From Macrostomum hystrix (Eukaryota > Animalia > Platyhelminthes): a stretch of DNA of 64,000 nt. The stretch covers positions 1,302,001 to 1,366,000 of the forward strand of contig CATNEN010000029.1 in the NCBI GenBank assembly GCA_950097015.1, in the 5' to 3' direction. The translations under genes and the position numbers were made by a program. Below, piece by piece: positions 1 through 60,271 of the stretch (positions within the stretch are counted from its first letter, which is position 1; every line of letters starts with the position of its first letter). The notes beneath the pieces are model-generated. The model worked only from the letters and a program-made list of their open reading frames with translations. It was not told where the DNA came from and searched no databases.

Positions 1-270
1 CCATCCTGAATAGGGAAGAATCCTATCCTGAATAGGGAAGAATCCTGAATAGGGAAGAATCCCATCCTGAATCGGGACGAATCCAATCCTGAAAAGGGAA
101 GAATTCCATCCAGAATAGGCAAGAATACATCCTGAACAGGGAAGATTCCCATCCTGAACAGAGAAGAATCCCATCCTAAACAGGGAAGAATCATATCCTG
201 AACAGGGAAGAATCCTATCCTAAACAGGTAAGAATCCCATCCTGAACAGGAAAAAATCCCATCCTGAATT
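1..270. repeat. Degenerate ~22-bp minisatellite (CCATCCTGAATAGGGAAGAATC), in a kinase intron, truncated by the window edge
   Basis: ATCCTGAA core recurs at 3, 25, 42, 64, 86 and onward. Confidence 0.9.
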
Positions 271-304
271 CTCTGAAAACACAGAGAAGCACAGCATTGC
301 CAAC

Positions 305-2035
305 CTGCATAGGTAAGCGTCCCGCAAATAGTCCTGGTGATCTGACCCCGCCTCAGCCATTTGCACAGTCCAAAGTCCACCAGCACCAAATGGCCAGCAG
401 CGTCCAGTACAACATTCTCCAGTTTGAGATCGCGGAAGATCACGCCTCGGCTGTGCAGGAAGTCCAGGCAGCAGGCCAGCTCTGCGGTGTAAAATCTGGC
501 CAGCTGCTCCGAGTAGCGGCCGTGCCGGCGCCAGTCGGCGAAGAGCTCGCCGTTGGGCAGGAACTGCAGCAGCAGGTAGAGCCGCTTCCTAGTCTGCCAG
601 TGGCACTGCAGAGCGGCCACGAATGCCGAATGACCAACGGCCAGCTGGACGCCAACTTCGTCTTTGCTCTGGTGGACAACGCCATGGCCCTGGGTAAGTA
701 GGCGCGCTTTGTCAATCACCTTCAAAGCGTACAGCTGCTTGTCGTCCTCAGAGCGGACTTTTAACACGTTGCCAAACGCGCCGGCAGCAATAACGTCTAG
801 CACCTGAATAGGTGAATAGGGCCAAAAAGTAATGAATTGTGATATTCTTTCAGAGCGGTTGACATCCCTGCCTCTCGCACCAAGGTCCCTGAGCTCGAAT
901 CCGCACTCATTTTAGGCGCAGCAGCACAGAGAAGGCTTGGGGATTCGAACCCTCAAGGTACAACGAGAGTGTAAACTGCCTGACAATGAGAAAGTCAGGG
1001 CTCAGGGTCGACTGTCACCAAATCATGGATACAATGGACAATATTATACATCTGTGGGGGGCCTTGCCTCGAGATCGCCCAACTCGTGCGGACCCGGCCG
1101 CACGGGAAACTCCGGTAAGAACAGGGACTCGATGAACGGCACCGGCCATTTGGACTTCGATCCGCCGAACGGGTCGCCCAGCGTCGATCGTTGAATTCGC
1201 CTACGGCTGCCGCGGTTCCATCGGTCGGCTAGTTCAGCAGCGGACGCTGACTGCTCTGTCGCTACCGCTGATACAGCAGGAGGGGCATCATGCTAGAAGG
1301 GTTGGATAAACACACTGAGCTTGTTAACGAATCTATTAAGTCTTGGGTGTTTAGTTTAAGTACTGGTCCGTGCCGGGATGAGACAATTCCCAGATGAGGC
1401 TATTCTCCGATAAGCCTATTCTCAGATAAGCCTATTTTCAAATGAGGCTATTCTCAGATGAGGCTATTCTCAGATGAGACTATTCTCAGATGAGGCTATT
1501 CTCAGATGAGGCTATTCTCAGATGAGACTATTCTCAGATGAGCCTAATCTCAGACGAGGCTTGGTGAGAGATGGCTAAGGGCAAATCCCAAATGCACAGT
1601 TAAGTGTACACTTGCTAGACCCAGTATATGTGATTATGAGCCTGTATGCATATGCATATCTTCAAAAGGACCCTGCGTCATCCTGTGTAACCAGGAGTGC
1701 GAAATCCCCAGACTCAAATCCTAAGCAATCCTTACTAGCATTGGCTGCAGAACAATCTGCTGTTGCTGCTGCAGCTGCACAAAGCCCTGCTCCGGATGCG
1801 GCGGAGTTGTTGACATTTGCGTCTCGTTGGCGCCGCTAACCAGCTCATCAGCATCAATGACGCCGTCGGTTGTCATCGCGCAGCCGGCGGCTCGGCCGCT
1901 GTGCGAGCGGAAGCTCAGCCTCGAGGCCCAGCGACGAATTCGGCGAAATGACGACTGTCGCAGCCGATAGAGCGAGGCGAAGCTGTGCTCGCGTGTGCCA
2001 CTGCGCTCATAGCCTACACCGTGTCGGTTGCCCAT
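305..2035 (-). CDS. RSKR: Ribosomal protein S6 kinase-related (RSKR/SGK494-like) AGC Ser/Thr kinase, 5' part; continues beyond the left edge
   Basis: Exons 2035-1736 (MGNRHG..., 100 codons, donor GTAAG), 1292-1068 (75 codons ending WPVPFIESLFLPEFPVRPGPHELGDLE) and 803-305 (VLDVIAAGAFGNVLKV..YALKVIDK..IFRDLKLENVVLD..LVDFGLCK..TICGTLTYA); phases 0/0/1 are consistent. Gly-loop, VAIK-like, RDLKxEN and DFG motifs are present. The pre-kinase WPVP.F..LFLPEFP motif is one I recall from RSKR/SGK494. Confidence 0.85.
851..1002 (+). mobile_element. SINE family 1 copy (tRNA-derived head, 3' stem-loop), in a kinase intron
   Basis: Shares CTCTCGCACCAAGGT, GAGCTCGAATCCGCA, GAGAAGGCTTGG and TGCCTGAC.ATGAGAAAGTCAGGGC with copies at 33685-33898 and 58880-59060. 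Confidence 0.7.
1393..1560. repeat. 16-bp minisatellite (AGGCTATTCTCAGATG), kinase intron 1
   Basis: Units start at 1445, 1461, 1477, 1493 and so on. Confidence 0.9.
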
Positions 2036-5000: not shown

Positions 5001-5159
5001 GCAAAATATTTCCCGCACACTTCACATACATTTTTTTTTCGATCTTTCCTCTCATGCCAACCGTCGATCAGATTATACGCATACGTATATGTCGTACGCG
5101 CGTGTATATATAATATGTGTTAGTTATAGTGTGCAATGTACGTACAATATACATTCTGT

Positions 5160-8100
5160 TTAAAGCTCAAAGCGCTTTTCCAATGAAAATGACGTCATTG
5201 TCGGCTCGCAGTCGATTTCCAGTTGATTTGTGTGGTTGATTGTCACAGAAACGACATCATAGATTTGCAGTTCCTGTATCGAGAATAGCGTGCAGCACTC
5301 TCTTTGCACTTTCGAAGCCTCCGGGGCGCTGATTTCACTGTGATCGATTGATCGGCCATTGATTAGAATGGCTAGTTTCACTGGAGTCGACGATTTTGCT
5401 TTGAAGTTAAAACACACCTGGAAGTAAAAAAAGTATAAAATTAAACTGAGAACGTGATGATCTCTTCCCACTTTCTCATCTCATATTTTAGCTTCATTTT
5501 TATCATATCTTGCTTCCGCAATTGTACCTCATTTCTATCACTCCAATTAATTTACCCCAAGGACTTCTTAAGTCGTCTTAAACGACACTTCAGTCGTCCT
5601 TGTCACCCCACTCCAACTCCTCTCGAAATACTCACCTGATCCTGTAGAGAGTAGTAAAATATGCAATTTGTTCAACGCGCTACTTAAAGTAATATTACAA
5701 GAAAATCAAAGCTATTTTGTTAGCTTATTTTTAGGAATGAGTCATGATGACTCATATGCTATTTTTAGAAACAAACTTATGTGACTTGAAACCGGAGAAC
5801 CGGTACTCGACAGCTGTATTGCTCATAACCCCATGATCACTTGAAAAACGAAGCTAAACAAACAAGTTTGACATCGCTGTGCAAATATGTATGCCCTAAG
5901 TAAACACCCGGTCCTAAACCGGTTTTCTCAAAAACTTTTTATAAATACAAGCTAAAATCCGAGCTGAAAATTCAGACTCGGAGTGGTCCAACGGACTTCA
6001 AAACAGCTTTAAGAAGGAGAGGACTCATCTCTGAGGGAAAGACAAGTGGTAAGCGCTGTACGAGACAAAGTTATTTATTGCTAGCAGTCGTTGAATTGAA
6101 CTATATTGAACTATTACGAGAGCCACATATTGTCGATACTTTTAAGAAAGGCCTGCTTATTTCCTAGCGCACATTCCTTGAAGATCTTTCGGATTACAAT
6201 TACAAGTATCTTTCGGAGGTAACAAAGAAGACGCCCTTCAGGAGGACCTATTAGAAAGACACTAGAGAGATTTCAATTGTTTACTAGGGCGCACGTTTCT
6301 ATTGTGAATTCCGAGCTCAAGGAAAGTCTAGAAGTCTAGATCTAGTCTAGAAGTGGGAGTTTTGTGTGCCTGATCAACACGCGATACTCTTCAATCCTCG
6401 TTATCTCTCAATGAAAACTTATGAAACTGTTGCACACCTCTTGAGATTACTTAATTGACATCATTGCGACAAAAGTAAAGCAATTTACTACTTCGTTGTC
6501 GGACACACCTTAGTAGCAATTCTGTAGTCACCATTAGCGTCGATCACCATTGAATACTTTTCCGAGTTGTATGAAAAATATGGCGAATAATAATTGGTCT
6601 CCGGTGCAAATTTAATTGTTCCGGATTCTGAAATTTACAAAGAAAACCCGATATTAACTTGCGGCTATGATGTGTAAGAATTTGTAATGCACAGGGACAT
6701 ACCCGTGGGATTGCACTGCTCTTTGTGAGGCACTGTCAGGCGGATCCAGCTCTGTGGGTGCGGACAGAAGTTTCAGCTTGATGGATTTATCCCATCGTAT
6801 CCCTTAGCAGAGAACTACGCTCGTACCAAGGTAGTTCAATTGACTATTTGGCCCCTTCACAATTTTTTGCGCTGCACCCGAACGGAACAACGCAGGCACA
6901 TGAAACTCAGGAACACTGGGCCAACTTTTGAATCTTCTGGAACAAGAATCAAGTCGCCATGCAGCTCTTCAGAACGTCGAGATATTCAATGTTTCTGGCT
7001 GAAGGTCAGATTTTGCCCATAAGAGCTAGTGTTTTTCATACACCCTTTTACACAAATTAGCACTGCGCCTCAGTGCGACTTTGCCAGGCCTTCAAAATTT
7101 ATCAGCAGGTCACCCGAATGTGCCTGCATCATCTATGTCTTTTGTGGTCACCTACCTTTATCTAGACGGATTTGCTGGACCTTCAAGGGCTACAGCAGGT
7201 GGAAATAGGCCACTATATGGACACCCTGACACGAATTTCTCCAATTTAATTGATCAAGCCTAAATATTAGGCCAAAAATAACAAGGCCAAAAAACAAGCC
7301 AAAAATAATTACTGATTGAATTTTTGGCTTGGTAGTCCTCCAGAAAACGAATGTAATACTTAGACGATATAACAATATAAAATAATAGCGTTATTTTTTT
7401 AACATTCAGTCCTACTGCTGTGTTATCGTTCTCTAGCCCCCTTGTTTAAAGCCTGCTTAGATCGTGTAATCTACCTTAGGGTATTATCTATTTTCCAGCT
7501 CGCTTCGCGCTAAGCCCCCTAGACCCGTCTGGTCCGACCCTGTCAATTCTCTTAATACGCCAATTTATCGATTAACACCGCGCTTGCGTCACCTCCTGCC
7601 TCGGGTTTTCGCTGTCTGCCCCCCCGCACCAGTCCCAGCCAATCAAATCGAATCAGTAAAAATTTACACAGACTAACTTTTAGCTCGATTCAGCGGCATT
7701 CCCTAGTAATTTTCTCGTTTTTAGCTTTTGTAAAACCTAGCTTGTACACAACCTCAAGTTCTCAACCCATGACATTGTGAAGGCTGATCCTTCTTTTGGA
7801 CTTTTTGTCGTCCCCACGTTCTATGAGTCCTCATGTACTATATTTCGGCCTGCTCACCCGATAGCAGCCCGAGCGAATATAATAGTAGCAGGCCACACCA
7901 AGTGTCAGCAGCAGCTGAACAGTCAGTGCTGAAATCAGCCACCAATTTCTTGGCCTCCGGTGCCGCGTCTTTTTGGGGCGCAACTGCCCCAATGTCGCAA
8001 CCGCCTCCGCTGCGGGCTCTCTAACAGGCAGCTCCGGTGGCGATGAATTATCGTCAGCGTTCCCGTTTCTACGGCCAGTCTGTTGCCGGCTTGAACGAGG

Positions 8101-9021
8101 CCATGGCTGACTGAGATCAGGGGCCGGCAGCGTCCTAGCTCTAGTCTGGGCTGCAGCTCTGGTTCCGGCATTGGCTCCAGAGTGGGTTCCAGCGATGGTT
8201 CCTGCATTTCTGCCAGCACTGATTCCAGCATTGGCTCCAGAGTTGGTTCCGGCATTGGCTCCAGCGATGGTTCTGGCATTTCTGCCAGCACTGATTCCAG
8301 CATTGGCTCCAGAGTTGGTTCCGGCATTGGCTCCAGCGATGGTTCTGGCATTTCTGCCAGCACTGATTCCGGCATTGGCTCCAGAGTTGGTTCCGGCATT
8401 GGCTCCAGCGATGGTTCTGGCATTTCTGCCAGCACTGATTCCGGCATTGGCTCCGGCATTGGCTCCAGCATCGGCTCCAGCGTCGGCTCCAGCGTCGGCT
8501 CCAGCGTCGGCTCCAGCATCGGCTCCAGCTTCGGCTTCAGCATCGGCTCCAGCATCGGCTCCAGCATCGGCTCCAGCGTCGGCTCCAGCGTCGGCTCCAG
8601 CATCGGCTCCAGCATCGGCTCCAGCATCGGCTCCAGCATCGGCTCCAGCGTCGGCTCCAGAATCGGCTACAGCGTCAGCTCCAGTGTCGGCTCCAGCATC
8701 GGCTCCAGCATCGGCTCCAGCGTCGGCTCCAGCATCGGCTCCAGCGTCGGCTTCAGTATCGGCTCCAGCGTCGGCTGCAGCATCGGCTCCAGCATCGGCT
8801 CCAGCATCGGCTCCAGCGTCGGCTCCAGCATTGGCTCCAACGTCGGTTCCGGCATTGGTTCCGGCAGCATTATCTAATTCCTGAACCTGAAGTAGCTCCT
8901 GCTTCTTAGTGAGTCCTTCATTGCCTGGCGCATTCTCCGGTACTGACGGAGTCACTGGCGCATCGTTAATGTAAAATGATTCATCCCATGGGTGCACGCG
9001 AGATGGATTGGAGCTTGTCAT
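5160..9021 (-). CDS. TNF-superfamily-like type II membrane ligand, paralog A (529 aa if the repeat is coding)
   Basis: Exons 9021-7858 (basic RPKKTRHRRPR then TM NWWLISALTVQLLLTLGVACYYY, donor GTGAG), 6751-6703 (SWIRLTVPHKEQCNPT, donor GTATGT), 6627-6509 (..YSMVIDANGDYRIATK) and 5417-5160 (VCFNF..CCTLFSIQELQIYDVVSVTI..EPTMTSFSLEKRFEL*). All introns are GT-AG; total 1590 nt in frame. Motifs resemble TNF-domain strands (LxIxxxGxYxIYxQV; CYxGGxxxLxxGDxLSV; TFFG). Confidence 0.7.
6858..7272 (+). repeat. ~410-bp dispersed repeat (possible non-autonomous DNA element), copy 1, in an intron of TNF-like A
   Basis: Colinear with the reverse complement of 39560-39967 (GCTGCACCCGAAC, CGTCGAGATATTCAATGTTTCTGG, GGCCTTCAAAATTTATC, GATCAAGCCTAAATATTAGGC). 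Confidence 0.75.
8161..8865 (-). repeat. Compound 72-bp (about 4 copies) and 12-bp (about 33 copies) tandem repeat inside the TNF-like A first-exon ORF
   Basis: The minus strand reads (GADA)n then (ANAGISAGRNARTIAGANAGTNSG)n; ATGGTTCTGGCA recurs at 72-bp spacing (8267, 8339). Confidence 0.9.
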
Positions 9022-9831
9022 GCTTGTTGATTTATGAGTCAAAGAGAACAGATCGAGCGATTCCTTACAAGGTTGACCTTTCTTTCTAGAGACCCAGCAT
9101 GCTACGTTTCGAAACGGTTTAGTTTATTTATAATAATCGCATTGGAATGTATTGGTAAAAGATATTGGCGCCTGTACCGGTGTGTAGCTGTACATTTTTC
9201 ATGTACACGTTTGTCTTCCTGCAGCTGCATGGCCCTGCTACACCAGTTTCACCTGCATATTCAAACCCTAGTTGTATATAATATACGGATGTTATGTATT
9301 TTTCACCTATTAGCAGATAACATCACTCCAAGTGGTCGAAGCCACGATGAGTAAAATAAACATTTCACAGAACCTTTCAACATGTATAATACATGTTGAA
9401 GCGAATACATGCATTCCAACGGGATAACCGAGAAAAAATGGTTTTGATATTTTGTTATCTCAACTCAATAGACGATTTGGTAGACTACAGATTAAAAACC
9501 TGGCTAGCAAGTTGCTACCTACTCAGGAGCCAGTTGCAACCATCTCTATACCCTCTCCCTTAACAGTAGAAAGATCACGGGGGAATTTCGAATTCCCACA
9601 TTTTTCTTTTTTCTGTATCTCCCAAAAGATTCAACAATCGCCATGAAAATCCATTTCACGGTCAACTTCCAGAATAACAAACATCGGCGTCTTCAAGATA
9701 TTCAACGATTCTCGTCGGGGAGTATGGAGGCAAGAACAAAAAAAAGTCAAAAAAATTCTGCTCATAAAATTTTAGTGTGTATAAAGTAATCATGTCGGCT
9801 ACTATATTGTTGACTATTGTAATTGATTATA

Positions 9832-12800
9832 ATCAACTGCTCAGTATCTTAATCAACTACTCAGAATCTTAATCAACTGCTCAGTATCTTAATCAACTGC
9901 TCAGTATCTTAATCAACTACTCAGTATCTTAATCAACTGCTCAGTATCTTAATCAACTGCTCAGTATCTTAATCAACTGCTCAGTATCTTAATCAACTAC
10001 TCAGTATCTTAATCAACTACTCAGTATCTTAATCAACTACTCAGTATCTTAATCAACTACTCAGTATCTTAATCAACTATACTCAGTATCTTAATCAACT
10101 ATACTCAGTATCTTAATCAACTACTCAGAATCTTAATCAACTGCTCAGTATCTTAATCAACTGCTCAGTATCTTAATCAACTACTCAGTATCTTAATCAA
10201 CTGCTCAGTATCTTAATCAACTGCTCAGTATCTTAATCAACTGCTCAGTATCTTAATCAACTACTCAGTATCTTAATCAACTATGCTCAGTATCTTACTC
10301 AACTACTCAGTATCTTAATCAACTGCTCAGTATCTTAATCAACTGCTCAGTATCTTAATCAACTACTCAGTATCTTAATCCACTACTCAGTATCTTAATT
10401 AACTATACTCAGTATCTTAATCAACTACTCAGTATCTTAATCAACTGCTCAGTATCTTAATCAACTGCTCAGTATCTTAATCAACTGCTCAGTATCTTAA
10501 TCAACTGCTCAGTATCTTAATTAACTATACTCAGTATCTCAATCAACTGCTCAGTATCTTAATCAACTGCTCAGTATCTTAATCAACTGCTCAGTATCTT
10601 AATCAACTGCTCAGTATCTTAATTAACTATACTCAGTATCTTAATCAACTATACTCAGTATCTTAATCAACTACTCAGTATCTTAATCCACTACTCAGTA
10701 TCTTAATCAACTATACTCAGTATCTTAATCAACTACTCAGTATCTTAATCAACTATACTCAGTATCTTAATCAACTACTCAGTATCTTAATCAACTATAC
10801 TCAGTATCTTAATCAACTAATCAGTATCTTAATCAACTGTACTCAGTATCTTAATCAACTGTACTCAGTATCTTAATCAACTATACTCAGTATCTTAATC
10901 AACTGTACTCAGTATCTTAATCAACTATACTCAGTATCTTAATCAACTGTACTCAGTATCTTAATCAACTATACTCAGTATCTTAATCAACTATACTCAG
11001 TATCTTAATCAACTACTCAGTATCTTAATCAACTGTACTCAGTATCTTAATCAACTGTACTCAGTATCTTAATCAACTACTCAGTATCTTAATCAACTAC
11101 TCAGTATCTTAATCAACTACTCAGTATCTTAATCAACTATACTCAGTATCTTAATCAACTACTCAGTATCTTAATCAACTACTCAGTATCTTAATCAACT
11201 ATACTCAGTATCTTAATCAACTATACTCAGTATCTTAAGCAACTACTCAGTATCTTAATCAACTAATCAGTATCTTAATCAACTGTACTCAGTATCTTAA
11301 TCAACTGTACTCAGTATCTTAATCAACTATACTCAGTATCTTAATCAACTGTACTCAGTATCTTAATCAACTATACTCAGTATCTTAATCAACTATACTC
11401 AGTATCTTAATCAACTGTACTCAGTATCTTAATCAACTGTACTCAGTATCTTAATCAACTATACTCAGTATCTTAATCAACTGTACTCAGTATCTTAATC
11501 AACTGTACTCAGTATCTTAATCAACTACTCAGTATCTTAATCAACTGTACTCAGTATCTTAATCAACTATACTCAGTATCTTAATCAACTACTCAGTATC
11601 TTAATCAACTACTCAGTATCTTAATCAACTACTCAGTATCTTAATCAACTACTCAGTATCTTAATCAACTACTCAGTATCTTAATCAACTACTCAGTATC
11701 TTAATCAACTGCTCAGTATCTTAATCAACTACTCAGTATCTTAATCAACTACTCAGTATCTTAATCAACTACTCAGTATCTTAATCAACTACTCAGTATC
11801 TTAATCAACTATACTCAGTATCTTAATCAACTATACTCAGTATCTTAATCAACTACTCAGAATCTTAATCAACTGCTCAGTATCTTAATCAACTGCTCAG
11901 TATCTTAATCAACTACTCAGTATCTTAATCAACTGCTCAGTATCTTAATCAACTGCTCAGTATCTTAATCAACTGCTCAGTATCTTAATCAACTACTCAG
12001 TATCTTAATCAACTATGCTCAGTATCTTAATCAACTACTCAGTATCTTAATCAACTGCTCAGTATCTTAATCAACTGCTCAGTATCTTAATCAACTACTC
12101 AGTATCTTAATCCACTACTCAGTATCTTAATTAACTATACTCAGTATCTTAATCAACTACTCAGTATCTTAATCAACTGCTCAGTATCTTAATCAACTGC
12201 TCAGTATCTTAATCAACTGCTCAGTATCTTAATCAACTGCTCAGTATCTTAATTAACTATACTCAGTATCTTAATCAACTGCTCAGTATCTTAATCAACT
12301 GCTCAGTATCTTAATCAACTGCTCAGTATCTTAATCAACTGCTCAGTATCTTAATTAACTATACTCAGTATCTTAATCAACAATACTCAGTATCTTAATC
12401 AACTACTCAGTATCTTAATCCACTACTCAGTATCTTAATTAACTATACTCAGTATCTTAATCAACTACTCAGTATCTTAATCCACTACTCAGTATCTTAA
12501 TCAACTATACTCAGTATCTTAATCAACTACTCAGTATCTTAATCAACTATACTCAGTATCTTAATCAACTACTCAGTATCTTAATCAACTATACTCAGTA
12601 TCTTAATCAACTAATCAGTATCTTAATCAACTGTACTCAGTATCTTAATCAACTGTACTCAGTATCTTAATCAACTATACTCAGTATCTTAATCAACTGT
12701 ACTCAGTATCTTAATCAACTATACTCAGTATCTTAATCAACTGTACTCAGTATCTTAATCAACTATACTCAGTATCTTAATCAACTATACTCAGTATCTT

Positions 12801-13660
12801 AATCAACTACTCAGTATCTTAATCAACTGTACTCAGTATCTTAATCAACTGTACTCAGTATCTTAATCAACTATACTCAGTATCTTAATCAACTACTCAG
12901 TATCTTAATCAACTACTCAGTATCTTAATCAACTACTCAGTATCTTAATCAACTATACTCAGTATCTTAATCAACTACTCAGTATCTTAATCAACTACTC
13001 AGTATCTTAATCAACTATACTCAGTATCTTAATCAACTATACTCAGTATCTTAAGCAACTACTCAGTATCTTAATCAACTAATCAGTATCTTAATCAACT
13101 GTACTCAGTATCTTAATCAACTGTACTCAGTATCTTAATCAACTATACTCAGTATCTTAATCAACTGTACTCAGTATCTTAATCAACTATACTCAGTATC
13201 TTAATCAACTATACTCAGTATCTTAATCAACTGTACTCAGTATCTTAATCAACTGTACTCAGTATCTTAATCAACTATACTCAGTATCTTAATCAACTGT
13301 ACTCAGTATCTTAATCAACTGTACTCAGTATCTTAATCAACTACTCAGTATCTTAATCAACTGTACTCAGTATCTTAATCAACTATACTCAGTATCTTAA
13401 TCAACTACTCAGTATCTTAATCAACTGCTCAGTATCTTAATCAACTACTCAGTATCTTAATCAACTACTCAGTATCTTAATCAACTACTCAGTATCTTAA
13501 TCAACTACTCAGTATCTTAATCAACTACTCAGTATCTTAATCAACTACTCAGTATCTTAATCAACTACTCAGTATCTTAATCAACTGCTCAGTATCTTAA
13601 TCAACTACTCAGTATCTTAATCAACTACCCAGTATCTTAATCAACTACTCAGTACCTCAA
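9832..13660. repeat. 3.8-kb satellite of 20/22-bp units (CTCAGTATCTTAATCAACTA[TA/GT]) between the two TNF-like genes
   Basis: Continuous tandem array visible directly. Confidence 0.97.
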
Positions 13661-14524
13661 TTAACGACTCAATATCTCACCTTACAACTTAGCAGAAAAA
13701 ATAATAAAGAGCATTGGTTCTGAGTTGTTTGGCTAGCCTCTTGGATCAAAATAAGTTATCTAGGCAGCATTTGTTCTTTATTTTTTCTGATAGTATGTTT
13801 TAAATTGATTTGAAAGAAGAAGATTATCAAATTTACACTTGAATAGCAAAACAGAAAGTTTCGTTTTGCATCAATCGTGATGGCAAGGCTATATTGTTTT
13901 GGCTTAAATAATAGTATATGTACACCAACGAGTTATGAAACAATAATGTAGCATTTTTAATCAATCGGAGTAACTGTGCGCTTCTCAAAATATAAAATTC
14001 ATTCTTATTGTTAATAGCATTGCTGACAGCATCTGATTAAGAAGGACCACAGTTAGATATAAATGACAGGAAACACCGATTTTTTGTAACTTAGTGGTGC
14101 TTCTTTTCACAATCCTGCTCAAAGACGACGGACTATAAAGTTTTCTTAGGATAAGTTTGATCTTAGCTCCTATCTAGGCATCGCAAATTTCATTCCTTAA
14201 TTTGAACTTATATGGATACACAATATTTATGCCCCTCTATATCTCTCTCCCTCTCGTTTTTCTTCCTCTTAGTCGCGTGCGAGGCGCTATTGGCTGATCC
14301 AGACTGCCAGCGTGAGCCTTACGCGGAGCCCTGAGCCAGCCATGTTTTGTTTCCTAACCCTTGCACGCATGTGATTGGCTGTGGCCGGGTAGGCTGGTGT
14401 GCGTCTGCTCTGCCCTCGGTCTGGAAGCCGCCACACTTGTGAGGGAGGCCCCATGAGTTTAGTTAATGTCTGGCTTAAATTTACTCCGACAAACGCCCTA
14501 AAACGCGTTATTGGAGTGGGGTCA

Positions 14525-17500
14525 CTACCGCATTTCAATTTCAAAAAAGGATTGATGTCGAACAATGGTTCGATTATTTTTAGAACTACTAAAAGCCAGC
14601 TTTGAGCGACTTTTCAAATAGCGAATGCCGAATATTGTGCAGTGAGTGTAGATCGCTGTGATGCTCTCCATACAGGTAATCCAGGTGTCTCCGTTGACTA
14701 GCACCGATGTGTCAACCTCGAACAGCGAGTTTTTGTCATGAAAGGTCACCTTAAAATGGAAACGCAAAGGGCATTCCTTAAACTGCGCATTTTTTTCATT
14801 GAATATTACGAACAATGCTTTTTGTACTGCGAATGCGTAAGCTGCCTGACGATGAGAAAGTCAGAGCAGTTCCACATACATTCGTGTGCTCAGAGGGCAT
14901 GAGTAATTGTTGGGGCCTTCTTAGATTTTGTAAAGATAAAAGCATAAATGATAGAAATAATTGCTGAAGGGCTGCTGGCAATGGCAGATTAATTGGCAAC
15001 ACTTGACCCTAAGCCAGCGAGGTGGCAATTTTGGGACATTGGTACGAGAGGCAAACGCGTTAAACGCTCTGCCACTGACCCCCCTTATGTAAAATATCGA
15101 AAAATCTGCACGTTTAACTGTTGCAATAGAAACTAGGAGTACACTTTCTTACTTCTGCATGGATACGGTAAACTGCACTGTGATGAACTTCGATCTCAGT
15201 TTCGCCGTTTTGTTTTTCCCAAAGCTGGTAGTACTCCGTCATTCGCTCACAATAGTTTCTCTTATCTTGCATGCCATGGTTAGTGCAGTGCAGCGGATAA
15301 TTACCTGTGGATTAAATTGCATCCTATAGTTCAAAAAATAACCTGTGACTGTAATACAAATGTGCCTGTCTGTGACTGTAATATAATGTGCCTGTCTGTG
15401 ACTGTAATACTAATTTGCATGTCTGTGACTGTAATATAATGTGCCTGTCTGTGACTGTAATACTAATTTGCATGTCTGTGACTGTAATATAATGTGCCTG
15501 TCTGTGACTGTAATACTAATTTGCATGTCTGTGACTGTAATATAATGTGCCTGTCTGTGACTGTAATACTAATTTGCATGTCTGTGACTGTAATATAATG
15601 TGCCTGTCTGTGACTGTATACTAATGTGCCTGTCTGTGACTGTAATATAATGTGCCTGTCTGTGACTGTAATATAATGTGCCTGTCTGTGACTGTAATAC
15701 TAATGTGCCTGTCTGTGACTGTAATATAATGTGCCTGTCTGTGACTGTAATACTAATGTGCCTGTCTGTGACTGTAATATAATGTGCCTGTCTGTGACTG
15801 TAATATAATGTGCCTGTCTGTGACTGTAATATAATGTGCCTGTCTGTGACTGTATACCAATGTGCCTGTCTGTGACTGTAATACTAATTGTGCCTGTTTA
15901 TGACTGTAATATAATGTGCCTGTCTGTGACTGTAATACTAATGTGCCTGTCTGTGACTGTAATACTAATGTGCCTGTCTGTGACTGTAATACTAATGTGC
16001 CTGTCTGTGACTGTAATACTAATGTGCCTGTCTATGACTGTAATATAATGTGCCTGTCTGTGACTGTAATATATATAATGTGCCTGTCTGTGACTGTAAT
16101 ATAATGTGCCTGTCTGTGACTGTAATACTAATGTGCCTGTCTGTGACTGTAATATAATGTGCCTGTCTGTGACTGTAATACTAATGTGCCTGTCTGTGAC
16201 TGTAATACTAATGTGCCTGTCTATGACTGTAATATAATGTGCCTGTCTGTGACTGTAATATATATAATGTGCCTGTCTGTGACTGTAATATAATGTGCCT
16301 GTCTGTGACTGTAATACTAATGTGCCTGTCTATGACTGTAATATAATGTGCCTGTCTGTGACTGTAATATATATAATGTGCCTGTCTGTGACTGTAATAC
16401 TAATGTGCCTGTCTGTGACTGTAATATAATGTGCCTGTCTGTGACTGTAATACTAATGTGCCTGTCTGTGACTGTAATACTAATGTGCCTGTCTATGACT
16501 GTATACTAATGTGCCTGTCTGTGACTGTAATACTAATGTGCCTGTCTGTGACTGTAATATAATGTGCCTGTCTATGACTGTAATATAATGTGCCTGTCTA
16601 TGACTGTAATATAATGTGCCTGTCTGTGACTGTAATACTAATTGTGCCTGTCTGTGACTGTAGTACTAATTGTGCCTGTCTGTGACTGTAATACTAATGT
16701 GCCTGTCTGTGACTGTAATACTAATGTGCCTGTCTGTGACTGTAATATAATGTGCCTGTCTGTGACTGTAATATAATGTGCCTGTCTGTGACTGTAATAC
16801 TAATGTGCCTGTCTGTGACTGTAATATAATGTGCCTGTCTGTGACTGTAATACTAATGTGCCTGTCTGTGACTGTAATACTAATGTGCCTGTCTGTTACT
16901 GTATACTAATGTGCCTGTCTGTGACTGTAATACTAATGTGCCTGTCTGTGACTGTAATATAATGTGCCTGTCTGTGACTGTAATACTAATGTGCCTGTCT
17001 GTGACTGTAATACTAATGTGCCTGTCTATGACTGTATACTAATGTGCCTGTCTGTGACTGTAATACTAATGTGCCTGTCTGTGACTGTAATATAATGTGC
17101 CTGTCTATGACTGTAATACTAATGTGCCTGTCTATGACTGTAATATAATGTGCCTGTCTGTGACTGTAATATAATGTGCCTGTCTATGACTGTAATATAA
17201 TGTGCCTGTCTATGACTGTAATATAATGTGCCTGTCTGTGACTGTAATACTAATTGTGCCTGTCTGTGACTGTAGTACTAATTGTGCCTGTCTGTGACTG
17301 TAATACTAATGTGCCTGTCTGTGACTGTATACTAATGTGCCTGTCTGTGACTGTAATATAATGTGCCTGTCTGTGACTGTATACTAATGTGCCTGTCTGT
17401 GACTGTAATACTAATGTGCCTGTCTGTGACTGTAATACTAATTGTGCCTGTCTGTGACTGTAATACTAATGTGCCTGTCTGTGACTGTATACTAATGTGC

Positions 17501-19138
17501 CTGTCTGTGACTGTAATACTAATGTGCCTGTCTGTGACTGTAATACTAATGTGCCTGTCTGTGACTGTAATACCAATCTGACTTTTTATATGATTGTGAA
17601 AGGTTGCAATCAAGAAAATCGCAGTGAAGCTACTGACCATTTGTGTAATAAATATTGGAAGTAGTTTTTGGAAACTCAAGCCGAATTCCAATCCAATCCT
17701 GCAAAGGAAGGAGGGGCGGACTCCAAGCATTCGATTTGTCTTTTTCTTATTGTGTACATAAAAGTATAAAATAATTTTTTTACATTTAAGATAATTTCTC
17801 CTTCGTTATCAGATTATTAAATGCTTCTGGACTAATCACACTGTTTAAGGTTGATCCTACGGAAAATCCCAGTCTAAGGATAGATATAATACTGTCTAAG
17901 GTCAAACCCTACTTTCAATGGGTATGCCACTGTCTCTACTGGATAGATGTCACTGTCTCTACTGGATAGATATCACTGTCTCTACTGGATAGATGTCACT
18001 GTCTCTACTGGATAGATGTCACTGTCTCTACTGGATAGATGCCGCTGTCTCTACTGGATAGATGCCGCTGTCTCTACTGGATAGATGCCGCTGTCTCTAC
18101 TGGATAGATGTCACTGTCTCTACTGGATAGATGTCACTGTCTCTACTGGATAGATGTCACTGTCTCTACTGGATAGATGTCACTGTCTCTACTGGATAGA
18201 TGTCACTGTCTCTACTGGATAGATGCCGCTGTCTCTACTGGATAGATGTCACTGTCTCTACTGGATAGATGTCACTGTCTCTACTGGATAGATGCCACTG
18301 TCTCTACTGGATAGATGCCGCTGTCTCTACTGGATAGATGTCACTGTCTCTTCTAACTCACCCTTTCCTTGGTGTTTTTCAGCCAGGACGCATTGCTTGA
18401 GTCTCTGGCACTGCGATTGTTGACAAGGAAGACGCAGCACACAGCGAATAGGGCCACCAGCATCATCTGGCAGAGCAACCACAGGGCCGGCGAAACTGCT
18501 TTCTTGTGCAGACAGGCGGGCCGACTCTCCAGTGCCACGTCGTATACCTGGCTAAGTCGTTGGCTCAGAACGGAGCTGGGCCCCTGACGCTGCTGCTGAT
18601 GCTGCTGTTAAAGCGTTTGCTGAACTGTTTCAGTCAGCACAACAACTAAGTACCACTTATTAATCCCTTGATCTCATGAAAAGCACTGCCATAGACCCAA
18701 TCAAGTATTCTCATAAACCCAATGAAGCACTGTCATTGAAAACATTCTTTAATTGCCCCTTAAAACCCATTTAAAGCACTCTCATTGATCTCATTCAAGC
18801 TCTCCCATAGAACTCAGGCACTCCTATAAGCCGCATCAAACAATCCACTGCATAGACCACATTTAGGCACTCGCTAGACCTTACTCGCTCATCATGCTTC
18901 AACCAAACATAAGAATTGAAATCAATTCTACCAAGGGAATTCTCCGCAATGGCACAACGCATGACAATGGATACATTGGCCTTACCCTATTGGCCGGAGC
19001 CTCATGCCGTGTCCTCTGCGACTGTTTGGCATCGGCGGAACGCCCTGCTCTGATCTTTTCCATTCGCAAGTTTGAATCGTCTTTTCGAAGGTTCACCACC
19101 TTCTCGTTGGAAATCGTGTATAGGTAGCTGCCAGACAT
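14525..19138 (-). CDS. TNF-superfamily-like type II membrane ligand, paralog B (288 aa)
   Basis: Exons 19138-18986 (aaaATG MSGSY.., donor GTAAG), 18604-18362 (TM ALWLLCQMMLVALFAVCCVFLV, donor GTGAG), 17698-17638 (DWIGIRLEFPKTTSNIYYTN, donor GTCAGT), 15304-15153 (..IEVHHSAVYRIHAE, donor GTAAG) and 14782-14525 (FKECP..HCTIFGIRYLKSRSKLAF..QSFFEIEMR*). Total 867 nt in frame. The last exon is 258 nt, as in paralog A. Confidence 0.68.
15020..15088 (-). mobile_element. SINE family 1 5' (tRNA-like) fragment; a separate 3' hairpin fragment lies at 14841-14870 (+)
   Basis: Reverse complement reads GGGGTCAGTGGCAGAGCGTTTAACGCGTTTGCCTCTCGTACCAA, matching the head of the 33685-33898 copy. Confidence 0.55.
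15340..17575. repeat. 26-28-bp minisatellite (GTGCCTGTCTGTGACTGTAATACTAAT) filling intron 3 of TNF-like B
   Basis: Direct tandem array of about 80 units. Confidence 0.97.
17925..18350. repeat. 23-bp minisatellite (CTGTCTCTACTGGATAGATGTCA) in intron 2 of TNF-like B
   Basis: GGATAGA recurs at 23-bp spacing (17941, 17964 and onward). Confidence 0.95.
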
Positions 19139-59331: not shown

Positions 59332-60271
59332 TCCTTCTGAGTCCTACTGTCCTACAAATCAAGCTATTTTGTCAGGCCCTGTGTTTGATTTCCCACAGTG
59401 CGCCGTCAACTGTCTCTATAAGTTAGCCGAAAGCCTGAAGACTTTATAAAACTTCCATCAAGTTTTAATGAAGCTTTAGGCTTGCAGGGAGACTAATTAG
59501 CTCGGATATGCAGTAAGTAATATCCAGACCAAACTATTCTCTCACGCCATCATGCAAGCGACCACAATACCTTGTATAACTACTTCTACGAGCTACATTT
59601 ATATCTATCGAGCTATCAGACCAAACTCTTGGCCTCGTATTTTTCTTTTTTTCATTTATTAGGTTCTATATAATCAGTTTCATCTCATTCTTTCCCTTAA
59701 CTGTGGTTGCTTCAGCTTCTGTCTCTGCTTTTCAATATAACTCCAGCCAAGTTGAAGCCAATGAAGCCCCCGCTGAAAACTAAAAAGAGGGCCCCTGAGA
59801 CTGCGTGCTGAGAGTGCGAGAGAATGCTAGTGGAGTAGTGGGCCGACTGCAGGTCGGGCAGCCCACCCCCCTCCACGGCCAGCCACCCCGATGCGCCTCC
59901 ACCAATAAGCCTCCTACTGTCATCCCACTAGCGTACTGAGGCTGAGGGCGATGAGTGTATGTGTGTGTTGGTGTGCACTTTAGCCAGGGGTGGCGCGGTG
60001 TACAGGCAGACAGACTGGTTGGCGGCGCAGAAAAGAAAGAATTCTTTTATTCTCACTGCCTCATTTTCTAAGCGCGACTCGAACAAGGGAGCAAGAACAA
60101 ATATGATGGTATATATGCATAGGAAACAATTCAACATTGCTCTAGTTGCCACCTGCGGCGCTGCTCCATTTTGAGTGCTTGTTTCCCACTTCTCTTTTTA
60201 CTCTTGATCACTACTGTCTGGTCTGGTAAATACAGCAGTAGCAACACTAGCACGAGGTTTCCAAGTTAGCC

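What the first reader, a model, noticed from the sequence alone, without database searches (positions are those of the whole stretch)
5160..19138. Hidden tandem pair of divergent TNF-superfamily-like ligands
Neither gene is visible as a single ORF. Both splice into type II membrane proteins (basic residues, then a single TM) followed by a short phase 0-to-1 exon (SWIRLTVP versus DWIGIRLEFP), a phase 1-to-0 exon ending in a TNF-type strand (MVIDANGDYRIATK|V versus IEVHHSAVYRIHAE|F) and a last exon of exactly 258 nt with C-T-x-F..L..(D/K)-(V/L) and a terminal aromatic strand. Shared intron phases plus very low residue identity point to an old tandem duplication. TNF ligands are poorly characterised in flatworm-like animals, so a divergent ligand cluster could be an undescribed immune or cell-death signalling module. 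The exon structure is read from the sequence; the TNF assignment is motif-level inference, and a C1q-like jelly-roll is the main alternative.
Basis: partly seen in the sequence, partly recalled or inferred. Interest (0 to 1): 0.82.

Follow-up and report, generated by a model that had tools for sequence, protein, structure and literature searches.

The report
Two neighbouring flatworm TNF-ligand genes
Two adjacent split genes in a macrostomid flatworm genome encode membrane-anchored proteins of the tumour-necrosis-factor ligand family, which adds two members (one very divergent) to a family already reported from related flatworms.

Summary
The exons are real sequence features. Two minus-strand genes, A (9021..5160, 4 exons, 529 aa) and B (19138..14525, 5 exons, about 277 aa), each encode a basic stretch, a single membrane helix and a C-terminal TNF-homology domain.

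- **TNF rather than C1q.** A's last exon alone passes Pfam TNF; no exon hits C1q. A profile of the family's last exons hits solved EDA, BAFF and APRIL.
- **Gene B is not new.** It is the orthologue of Macrostomum lignano A0A1I8IXE1, which UniProt names a TNF_2 domain protein. That orthologue's domain models as a TNF jelly-roll and a homotrimer.
- **Gene A** is an orphan on a long branch. It lacks the first of the family's two conserved cysteines.

- B's last exon most likely starts at 14749 (225 nt), not 14782 (258 nt).
- The shared intron positions hold in all six paralogues whose exon boundaries I mapped, so they do not point to an A/B tandem duplication. That idea is neither shown nor rejected.
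- TNF ligands in Macrostomum were published in 2020, and this scan has already followed up a TNF-ligand cluster elsewhere in this genome.

No RNA run was listed, so splicing and expression remain untested. The joined spliced models were not searched or folded. Verdict: new members of a known kind.

The parts
7858..9021 (-). Gene A exon 1 (388 codons): ATG at 9021, cytoplasmic tail, membrane helix, 6-residue stalk, donor CGG|gtgagc in phase 0
   Evidence: Open frame and donor read. No in-frame ATG lies between the repeat and the membrane helix, so translation has to start upstream of the repeat. This is the least certain part of the model, with no RNA and no homologue.
8188..8862 (-). In-frame 24-nt (8-residue) tandem repeat inside gene A exon 1, encoding Ala/Gly/Asp-rich low-complexity sequence (GADAGADA...)
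   Evidence: Tandem Repeats Finder. Composition: residues 61-300 of exon 1 hold 95 Ala, 50 Gly and 29 Asp. All six frames are open here, so the open frame alone is weak evidence of coding.
7876..7944 (-). Gene A membrane helix WWLISALTVQLLLTLGVACYYYI, preceded by RPKKTRHRRPRN
   Evidence: Best 19-residue Kyte-Doolittle window scores 1.78, next best elsewhere 0.26. Net charge is +7 in the 15 residues before it.
6703..6751 (-). Gene A exon 2, 49 nt, phase 0 to 1, SWIRLTVPHKEQCNPT; likely strand A of the TNF-homology domain
   Evidence: cacag| acceptor and |gtatgt donor. The equivalent exon of B's orthologue lies in the modelled trimer interface.
6509..6627 (-). Gene A exon 3, 119 nt, phase 1 to 0, ending ...MVIDANGDYRIATK (first half of strand C)
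   Evidence: tttcag| acceptor and |gtgtgt donor. The phase-0 intron at this point is shared with the five other paralogues whose boundaries I mapped.
5160..5417 (-). Gene A exon 4, 258 nt including the TAA stop at 5162-5160: VCFNFK...TSFSLEKRFEL (rest of strand C through strand H)
   Evidence: Pfam TNF PF00229, E 1e-5, 25.9 bits against a cut-off of 23. It is the only six-frame PF00229 hit in the 220-Mb genome. hhalign against an 11-sequence family profile without A: probability 88.6%, E 2.6e-6.
18986..19138 (-). Gene B exon 1 (51 codons): ATG at 19138, MSGSYLY..., donor AGG|gtaagg
   Evidence: KMSGSYLY is identical in M. lignano P0002.
18362..18604 (-). Gene B exon 2 (81 codons): cytoplasmic part, membrane helix and a roughly 20-residue stalk with two N-x-S/T sites; donor AGG|gtgagt
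   Evidence: tblastn with M. lignano P0002: 48.6% identity, E 6e-27. Sequence read.
18422..18487 (-). Gene B membrane helix ALWLLCQMMLVALFAVCCVFLV
   Evidence: Best 19-residue Kyte-Doolittle window scores 2.78, next best elsewhere 0.04. Net charge is +3 before it.
17638..17698 (-). Gene B exon 3, 61 nt, phase 0 to 1, DWIGIRLEFPKTTSNIYYTN(G); strand A
   Evidence: tttgcag| acceptor and |gtcagt donor. It matches KKWIGLRLE in P0002 and AWMRLVFD...YTTNG in paralogue C, which has the same phase-1 donor. The P0002 residues of this exon are in the modelled trimer interface.
15153..15304 (-). Gene B exon 4, 152 nt, phase 1 to 0, NYPLHC...IEVHHSAVYRIHAE (first half of strand C)
   Evidence: ccacag| acceptor and |gtaaga donor. 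By eye, the exon 3/4 junction TNG|NYPLHC corresponds to KTA-NYQLKC in P0002.
14525..14749 (-). Gene B last exon as supported by homology, 225 nt including the TAG stop: VTFHDKNSLF...SFFEIEMR
   Evidence: attttaag|GTGACC acceptor. tblastn with P0002: 52.5% identity, E 1.5e-15. P0001 and P0003 alignments start at ...VTFHD. Both family cysteines are present.
14750..14782 (-).
   Evidence: A-rich sequence precedes gcgcag|TTT. No paralogue or orthologue has an insertion here.
9830..13677 (.). Intergenic 20-bp satellite (185 copies) filling most of the 5.5 kb between gene B's stop and gene A's start
   Evidence: Tandem Repeats Finder.

Best explanation
The region holds two same-strand neighbouring genes for type II transmembrane ligands of the TNF superfamily. 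They belong to a family with at least nine loci in this macrostomid flatworm genome.

Each protein has an N-terminal cytoplasmic tail, one membrane anchor and a compact C-terminal TNF-homology domain of about 140 residues, encoded by the last three exons. A conserved phase-0 intron splits strand C. The domain is expected to fold as a ten-strand jelly-roll and to form homotrimers through strands A, C, F and H. The trimers would then cluster TNF-receptor-type proteins on neighbouring cells.

Gene B is the orthologue of M. lignano A0A1I8IXE1. It keeps the two-cysteine pattern that aligns with the cysteines of EDA, BAFF and APRIL. Gene A is the most divergent member. It lacks the first of those cysteines, and its stalk is only 6 residues long, so it would act while still membrane-bound. 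Its cytoplasmic tail carries about 240 residues of Ala/Gly/Asp-rich sequence, most of it in-frame tandem repeat.

Shown here: exon anatomy, family membership by profile, the fold of B's orthologue, and in-silico support for a trimer of that orthologue. Inferred: expression, the exact junctions, trimerisation of A and B themselves, receptor binding and biological role.
For: Anatomy:
- Canonical splice sites and consistent phases.
- A single membrane helix in each gene with positive charge on its N-terminal side.

Gene A:
- Its last exon alone scores above Pfam's TNF cut-off (25.9 bits against 23, E 1e-5), with no C1q hit even at E 10.
- It is the only six-frame PF00229 hit in the genome.
- hhalign against the family profile built without A: probability 88.6%, E 2.6e-6 over 72 columns.
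- A profile of B plus paralogue C finds A's last exon as the best non-self hit among the window's 1854 six-frame segments, E 2.8e-4.

Gene B:
- An exhaustive HMMER search of 1.84 billion proteins with the B+C last-exon profile gave only three hits, all M. lignano.
- P0002 is A0A1I8IXE1, named 'TNF_2 domain-containing protein'. P0001 is A0A1I8G0K9, named 'TNF family profile domain-containing protein'.
- P0001 scores 20.2 bits on Pfam TNF. P0003 scores 28.5 bits on TNF against 14.4 on C1q.
- P0002 aligns to B's exon 2 (E 6e-27), to its last exon (E 1.5e-15) and to the start MSGSYLY. B pairs with P0002 in the tree, with support 87-94.

Family:
- The 12-sequence last-exon profile hits PDB EDA (2e-6), BAFF (8e-4) and APRIL (0.015), and no C1q at E<=1.

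Fold and assembly, on P0002:150-300:
- AlphaFold2 model with pLDDT 68 and pTM 0.62.
- The Foldseek top 50 are all TNF ligands, with EDA-A1 best at 2.7e-5.
- VIA-align: EDA-A1 Z 12.0 (rmsd 2.9, 122 aligned), Eiger 11.2, APRIL 11.2, BAFF 11.1. The first C1q is at rank 16 with Z 10.2.
- Three-copy model: ipSAE 0.59 against a best control of 0.00. The mark was reached by 21 of 30 proteins solved as pairs of one chain and 0 of 23 solved as single chains. The runs share at least 49% of contacts, and partner pLDDT is at least 59. The interface lies on strands A, C, F and H.

Conserved gene structure:
- The intron inside strand C sits at the same place in all six paralogues whose boundaries I mapped.
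Against: - No transcript evidence: no RNA run was listed, so no junction is confirmed.
- Gene B's own exons give no Pfam hit, and neither does its orthologue P0002. The B+C profile reaches EDA only at E 0.1. B's TNF assignment therefore rests on family-level profiles, a modelled fold and UniProt's automatic name.
- The fold and trimer models are of the M. lignano orthologue, not of the window's protein. The model is only moderately confident. A trimer pass may come from the predictor's memory of solved TNF trimers.
- TNF and C1q rows differ by less than 2 Z units.
- Gene A has no detected relative outside this genome, a very long branch, and lacks one of the two family cysteines.
- Gene A's first exon runs through a repeat that is open in all six frames.
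- Gene A's last exon modelled alone gave an inconclusive mix of C1q and TNF matches.
Confidence: 0.8

Rival explanations
1. Gene A is not a working ligand gene. It would be a decaying or mis-modelled copy: a relic TNF-like C-terminal exon set whose apparent first exon is only a repeat-filled open frame. Only gene B would be functional.
For: - A sits on by far the longest branch, 2.05 changes per column against a median of 0.5.
- It has lost the first conserved cysteine.
- It has no paralogue by direct search in this genome and no hit among the four M. lignano proteins recovered here. Word search on exon 1 was blank.
- The repeat in exon 1 is open in all six frames, so it carries no coding signal.
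- No RNA run was listed.
Against: - All four exons are open, with strong splice sites and matching phases.
- The parts of exon 1 on either side of the repeat are in the same frame, running from the ATG to a good membrane helix with a basic N-flank.
- Its last exon is the best Pfam TNF match in the whole genome, which would be odd for a decayed copy.
- The absence of an orthologue was tested only weakly, because the length window of the word search and the B/C-biased profile would both miss it.
Confidence: 0.13
2. The C-terminal domains are C1q-like (or another jelly-roll of the C1q/TNF superfamily), not TNF ligands.
For: - The two folds are nearly the same. C1q heads reach Z 10.2 against 12.0 for EDA with the orthologue model.
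- Cbln4 is the top, non-significant Foldseek row for gene A's half-domain model.
- P0003 has a weak C1q hit of 14.4 bits.
Against: - No C1q Pfam hit for any exon of A or B even at E 10, whereas A passes the TNF cut-off.
- The family profile hits only TNF ligands among significant PDB rows.
- The first 15 VIA rows and the first 50 Foldseek rows are all TNF ligands.
- The architecture is a type II membrane anchor with no signal peptide and no Gly-X-Y collagen stalk. From general knowledge, that is the TNF ligand layout and not the C1q layout.
Confidence: 0.04
3. The exons are chance open frames in repeat-rich non-coding DNA.
For: - The region is full of minisatellites that create long open frames in every frame.
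Against: - None of the domain-coding exons lies in a repeat.
- They match independent sequences from another species at E 6e-27 and 1.5e-15, and a curated Pfam model above its cut-off.
Confidence: 0.01

Closest known systems
Macrostomum lignano TNF ligands: UniProt A0A1I8IXE1 and A0A1I8G0K9, NCBI PAA91604.1, and the set described by Bertevello et al. 2020 (PMC7519573)
   Same: - Gene B is the orthologue of A0A1I8IXE1. They share the same start (MSGSYLY), membrane helix, W-containing strand A, strand C motif and C-terminal strand. Identity is 49-53% over the two largest exons.
- Architecture is the same: type II membrane anchor followed by a TNF-homology domain.
   Different: - The window comes from another macrostomid species.
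- B has about 10 more residues after strand C than the A0A1I8IXE1 model.
- Gene A has no counterpart among the M. lignano proteins recovered here.
Vertebrate EDA, BAFF, APRIL and TWEAK subgroup of TNF ligands
   Same: - These are the best sequence-profile hits (EDA 2e-6, BAFF 8e-4, APRIL 0.015) and the best structural hit (EDA-A1, Z 12.0).
- The family's two conserved cysteines align with the cysteine pair of these proteins. From general knowledge, that pair forms the strand E to strand F disulfide.
   Different: - Identity is only 14-17%.
- There is no collagen stalk as in EDA, and I saw no furin-type R-x-K/R-R site by eye in either stalk (sequences).
- Gene A lacks the first cysteine.
- The receptors are unknown.
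Drosophila Eiger
   Same: - An invertebrate type II TNF ligand.
- Structural match Z 11.2 (rmsd 3.9, 121 aligned).
   Different: - No significant sequence match here.
- Eiger is a single-copy gene in flies, whereas this worm has at least nine loci.
C1q-domain proteins (C1q, cerebellins, adiponectin)
   Same: - Same jelly-roll fold class, with Z 9.5-10.2.
   Different: - No Pfam C1q hit.
- A membrane-anchored type II layout instead of a secreted protein with a collagen stalk.

Membership tests
TNF ligand superfamily (TNFSF) | TNF-homology domain recognised by the curated profile (Pfam PF00229 at or above its cut-off): gene A | tested here: met
   The last exon alone scores 25.9 bits against a cut-off of 23, E 1e-5, covering profile positions 30-124 of 127. 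The genome-wide six-frame score is 23.9 bits. The joined domain was not searched.
TNF ligand superfamily (TNFSF) | TNF-homology domain recognised by the curated profile: gene B | tested here: inconclusive
   - No Pfam hit for any single exon of B or for its orthologue P0002.
- UniProt names P0002 'TNF_2 domain-containing protein'.
- Relatives P0001 and P0003 score 20.2 and 28.5 bits on PF00229.
- The family profile hits EDA, BAFF and APRIL, but the B+C profile alone reaches EDA only at E 0.1.
TNF ligand superfamily (TNFSF) | Type II membrane topology: cytoplasmic N-terminus, one anchor helix, C-terminal ectodomain | tested here: met
   Each gene has one hydrophobic segment (Kyte-Doolittle 1.78 and 2.78, next best 0.26 or lower). 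Net positive charge precedes it (+7 and +3). There is no N-terminal hydrophobic signal. This is a hydropathy calculation only; no dedicated topology predictor was run.
TNF ligand superfamily (TNFSF) | Ten-strand jelly-roll fold closest to solved TNF ligands | tested here: met
   - Tested for gene B through its M. lignano orthologue: pLDDT 68 and pTM 0.62.
- All 50 best Foldseek rows are TNF ligands.
- EDA-A1 scores Z 12.0, and the first C1q scores Z 10.2 at rank 16.
- For gene A only the last exon could be modelled, and the result was inconclusive.
TNF ligand superfamily (TNFSF) | Homotrimer through the inner sheet (strands A, C, F, H) | tested here: inconclusive
   - Three copies of P0002:150-300 gave ipSAE 0.59 against a best control of 0.00.
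- The mark was reached by 21 of 30 proteins solved as pairs of one chain and 0 of 23 solved as single chains.
- The runs share at least 49% of contacts, and partner pLDDT is at least 59.
- Interface residues map to strands A, C, F and H.
- This supports a trimer for the orthologue, but it is a model, it may come from memory of solved TNF trimers, and it is not of the window's proteins.
TNF ligand superfamily (TNFSF) | Binding to a cysteine-rich-domain TNF receptor | not testable with these tools
   No receptor was examined. An earlier scan note (s1-319815) reports candidate minimal TNFR-like genes elsewhere in this genome; I did not check it.
EDA/BAFF/APRIL/TWEAK subgroup | Cysteine pair aligned with the strand E to strand F disulfide of the subgroup | tested here: met
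   - This status is for gene B and the other ten family sequences: both cysteines are present and align with the APRIL, BAFF and EDA cysteines.
- Gene A does not meet it. It has Ser in place of the first cysteine and Cys-Cys at the second site.
- The bond itself was not examined in a model.
C1q domain family | Pfam PF00386 match, secretion signal and collagen-like Gly-X-Y stalk | tested here: not met
   - No PF00386 hit at E up to 10 for any exon.
- The layout is a type II anchor instead of a signal peptide.
- Gene A's repeat has a period of 8 residues (GADAGADA), is not Gly-X-Y, and lies on the cytoplasmic side.

The most novel reading that the evidence does not exclude
Gene A is a lineage-specific, fast-evolving TNF ligand of an unusual build. 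Its TNF-homology domain has lost the family's conserved cysteine pair and sits only about 6 residues from the membrane. It is joined to a cytoplasmic tail of about 360 residues that is dominated by an Ala/Gly/Asp-rich tandem repeat. Such a ligand could only work while membrane-bound, by cell contact, and might signal backwards through its tail.
Probability: 0.2. Interest if true: 0.4.

Novelty: new member of a known kind. Interest (0 to 1): 0.25.

Why it matters
Free-living flatworms keep their own TNF ligands, whereas no canonical ligand gene has been found in parasitic flatworms (Bertevello et al. 2020, PMC7519573). A well-mapped ligand family in a compact macrostomid genome helps in two ways: tracing how the family grew, and pairing ligands with the worm's receptor candidates.

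These two genes add exact exon maps. They show a family-wide intron inside strand C that is useful for finding further hidden members, since single exons mostly fall below Pfam's cut-off. They also add one unusually divergent member. None of this changes the existing picture.

Tried and rejected
- **RNA evidence.** The look-up of sequencing runs on 5100-7950 listed no RNA run, so read laying could not be used.
- **Word searches.** B's last open segment and A's exon 1 (residues 285-403) both returned nothing. This genome's proteins seem not to be in that collection, and the length window excludes full-length relatives of single exons.
- **Gene A against PDB.** phmmer with A's last exon gave no hit at E 10.
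- **Gene A fold.** Its last exon modelled alone had pLDDT 65. Foldseek gave nothing at E 0.001 or better; the weak rows mixed cerebellin/C1q, GITRL, lymphotoxin and BclA. A half domain cannot separate TNF from C1q.
- **P0002 against PDB by sequence.** No meaningful hit.
- **Single-exon Pfam scans of paralogues.** Mostly blank.
- **Conserved kinase neighbour.** I considered this because P0004, in the same cluster as P0001, is named a kinase-domain protein and a kinase gene lies at 3-911. P0004 does not match the window's kinase, so I dropped the idea.
- **More TNF-like genes in the window.** The family profile finds only these two.
- **Joined spliced models.** Everything was done exon by exon, or on database proteins.
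- **Last word search.** Left unused. A's exons are too short to reach full-length relatives within its length window.

Full report
**What is there**

The window is part of contig 29 of a 220-Mb, 42-contig genome. Earlier notes of this scan call it a macrostomid flatworm. That fits my own result that the nearest database proteins are all from Macrostomum lignano, at about 50% identity.

All acceptors are AG, all donors are GT, and the phases fit.

| Gene | Exon | Coordinates | Notes |
|---|---|---|---|
| A | 1 | 9021-7858 | 388 codons |
| A | 2 | 6751-6703 | 49 nt |
| A | 3 | 6627-6509 | 119 nt |
| A | 4 | 5417-5160 | 258 nt with stop |
| B | 1 | 19138-18986 | 51 codons |
| B | 2 | 18604-18362 | 81 codons |
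| B | 3 | 17698-17638 | 61 nt |
| B | 4 | 15304-15153 | 152 nt |
| B | 5 | 14749-14525 | 225 nt with stop |

Gene A adds up to 529 aa and gene B to 277 aa. Each gene has a single strongly hydrophobic segment preceded by net positive charge, as expected for a type II anchor.

The two genes lie head to tail on the same strand, 5.5 kb apart. A 20-bp satellite fills 3.8 kb of that gap. The family profile finds no third member in the window.

**Correction of one exon**

For gene B this depends on an acceptor at 14782, which sits behind an A-rich tract.

I mapped the exon boundaries of five paralogues in this genome: gene C on contig 39, L007, L008 and L009 on contig 38, and gene A itself. In every one the penultimate exon ends in phase 0 after the motif Y-R/V/Y-I/V-x-x-x, followed by a GT. 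The last exon then starts straight after an AG with V/I/T-x-F/Y-x-D. The M. lignano proteins continue the strand in the same way...FAQVTFRDD and ...HSTVTFIDN, and their tblastn alignments to gene B begin at ...VTFHD.

Gene B has exactly this site, ccattttaag|GTGACCTTTCATGAC, at 14749. This gives ...AVYRIHAE|VTFHDKN, an unbroken strand C of the G-x-Y-x-I-x-x-x-V-x-F type. Both choices are in frame, so RNA has to decide, but homology favours 225 nt.

**TNF or C1q**

- **Gene A.** Its last exon alone passes Pfam's TNF cut-off (25.9 bits against 23, E 1e-5). No C1q hit appears even at E 10. It is the only six-frame PF00229 hit in the whole genome. Against an 11-sequence family profile that excludes A, hhalign gives 88.6% probability and E 2.6e-6 over 72 columns.
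- **Gene B, single exons.** They give no Pfam hit, and the word search was blank. I therefore ran the exhaustive HMMER search with a profile of the last exons of B and its paralogue C.
- **Result of that search.** It returned three proteins out of 1.84 billion, all from M. lignano.
  - P0002 is A0A1I8IXE1, named 'TNF_2 domain-containing protein'.
  - P0001 is A0A1I8G0K9, named 'TNF family profile domain-containing protein'. It scores 20.2 bits on Pfam TNF.
  - P0003 is PAA91604.1. It scores 28.5 bits on TNF and 14.4 on C1q.
- **Orthology of B.** P0002 matches B's exon 2 at 48.6% (E 6e-27) and its last exon at 52.5% (E 1.5e-15). It shares the start KMSGSYLY. By eye, it also carries the WIGLRLE and NYQLKC...GVYRINA equivalents of exons 3 and 4, in the same order. 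This supports both the gene model and the orthology. B pairs with P0002 in the tree, with support 87-94.
- **Family profile against PDB.** Profiles of six and of twelve last exons hit only TNF ligands at significant E-values: EDA 2e-6, BAFF 8e-4, APRIL 0.015, and a single-chain APRIL-BAFF-BAFF construct 4e-15. The two conserved cysteines align with the cysteine pair of those proteins. From general knowledge, that pair forms the strand E to strand F disulfide of the EDA/BAFF/APRIL/TWEAK subgroup.

**Fold and assembly**

The joined models of A and B were not to be built. I therefore modelled the domain of B's orthologue (P0002:150-300), using an alignment whose other rows were database proteins and single exons given by reference.

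- **Model quality.** It is moderately confident, with pLDDT 68 and pTM 0.62, and is almost all beta.
- **Foldseek.** The 50 best rows are all TNF ligands, with EDA-A1 best at 2.7e-5.
- **VIA-align, independent of Foldseek.** EDA-A1 scores Z 12.0 (rmsd 2.9, 122 aligned), Eiger 11.2, APRIL 11.2 and BAFF 11.1. The first C1q head comes at rank 16 with Z 10.2. The fold is the TNF/C1q jelly-roll, and the ranking leans to TNF by less than 2 Z units.
- **Three-copy model.** ipSAE was 0.59 against a best control of 0.00. The mark was reached by 21 of 30 proteins solved as pairs of one chain and 0 of 23 solved as single chains. The runs share at least 49% of contacts, and partner pLDDT is at least 59. 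The confident contacts fall on KWIGLRL (strand A, the short W exon), GVYRINA (C), THCTIFGT (F) and TYFEIEMR (H). From general knowledge, that is the classical TNF trimer interface.
- **Limits.** The pass may reflect the predictor's memory of solved TNF trimers, and it concerns the orthologue rather than the window's protein.
- **Gene A.** Its last exon modelled alone (pLDDT 65) gave only non-significant rows mixing C1q and TNF members.

**Family and history**

A family profile finds at least nine last exons of this type in the genome, on contigs 29, 32, 38 and 39. By eye, the three extra loci (L013-L015) show the same strand-C and last-exon motifs.

Gene B's closest relative in this genome is gene C on contig 39, at 39-40% identity in the last exon. 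C has a similar membrane helix and the same order of exons. Three genes of this genome (B, C and L008) pair in the tree with M. lignano proteins P0002, P0001 and P0003 respectively, so these duplications predate the split of the two species.

Gene A is an orphan on a very long branch. Its best identity, 26%, is to B and P0002. Holding A with the B clade costs 0.8 log-likelihood units (p-AU 0.40), so the grouping is neither shown nor rejected. The shared intron phases hold in all six mapped paralogues and are no evidence for an A/B tandem duplication in particular.

**What is known already**

Bertevello et al. 2020 (PMC7519573) reported four M. lignano proteins with high-confidence TNF domains, plus further ligands rebuilt from RNA-seq of M. 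lignano, M. tuba and two Microdalyellia species. Many of them have transmembrane helices. No canonical ligand was found in parasitic flatworms. A 2024-2026 preprint (10.1101/2024.07.27.603686) places all M. lignano TNFSF homologues in one well-supported clade.

This scan has also followed up a five-gene TNF-ligand cluster, and a cluster of minimal TNFR-like genes, elsewhere in this same genome. The present pair therefore adds to a known picture. Gene B is an orthologue of an annotated protein, and gene A is a new, very divergent member.

**Mechanism, with its status**

- **Shown:** exon anatomy, type II hydropathy pattern, family membership, TNF-type fold and a supported trimer model for B's orthologue.
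- **Inferred:** the proteins are made, they trimerise through strands A, C, F and H, and they engage TNFR-type receptors on other cells.
  - Gene B has a stalk of about 20 residues with two N-x-S/T sites and could be shed or act on the membrane. I saw no furin-type site in it by eye.
  - Gene A has only RSGCYR between the membrane helix and strand A, so it would act membrane-bound.
  - Gene A's cytoplasmic tail contains about 240 residues of Ala/Gly/Asp-rich sequence, most of it in-frame 24-nt repeat. Because that repeat is open in every frame, the tail is the least certain part of the model.

**Limits**

- No RNA run was listed, so nothing here shows expression or any junction.
- The joined spliced proteins were not searched, folded or docked.

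Noticed in passing
window 9830-13677; 15343-17577; 17924-18351: Three long minisatellite arrays lie between and inside the two genes. The first has a 20-bp unit in 185 copies and is intergenic. The second has a 26/53-bp unit in about 84 copies, in gene B's intron 3. The third has a 23-bp unit in 18.6 copies, in gene B's intron 2. All show 94-96% matches. Paralogue C on contig 39 also carries a long repeat array in the intron before its last exon. The window holds many more such arrays, for example around 30.4-32.8 kb and 51-54.7 kb.
   Followed up: partly
G000 contig 39, locus L012 354-3684 (minus strand): This is an intact paralogue of gene B ('gene C'). It has a similar membrane helix, the same order of exons (W exon with phase-1 donor, strand-C exon, last exon) and the same intron positions. 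It is the orthologue of M. lignano A0A1I8G0K9.
   Followed up: yes
G000 C38:22830595-22832140 (L007/L008), C38:15684565-15684819 (L009), C32:286613-286858 (L013), C29:6265341-6265559 (L014), C39:20781264-20781467 (L015): These are seven further TNF-homology last exons, counting gene C. L007 and L008 form a head-to-head pair on contig 38. Most of these genes have a G-P-L-x-C motif at the start of the domain, which genes A and B lack or have altered. Two matches carry one stop inside the match as reported; I did not examine this further.
   Followed up: partly
L012 6928-9999 (minus strand), upstream of gene C on contig 39: An open frame of 1024 residues with a CCHC zinc-knuckle motif, which looks like a retrotransposon gag-pol. 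I only noted it and did not analyse it.
   Followed up: no
window 3-911 (-); 26880-50344 (+); 60251-62411 (+): Neighbouring genes by Pfam are a protein kinase exon (PF00069, E 5e-32), a myosin II heavy chain spread over many exons (Myosin_N, Myosin_head at E 1e-155, Myosin_tail_1), and an amiloride-sensitive sodium channel (ASC, E 5e-30).
   Followed up: partly
protein P0002 (M. lignano A0A1I8IXE1), residues 1-48 and about 228-236: The database model reads through about 48 residues upstream of the conserved MSGSYLY start. It also lacks about 10 residues after strand C that gene B and the other family members have, which suggests a different splice choice or a faulty model in M. lignano.
   Followed up: no
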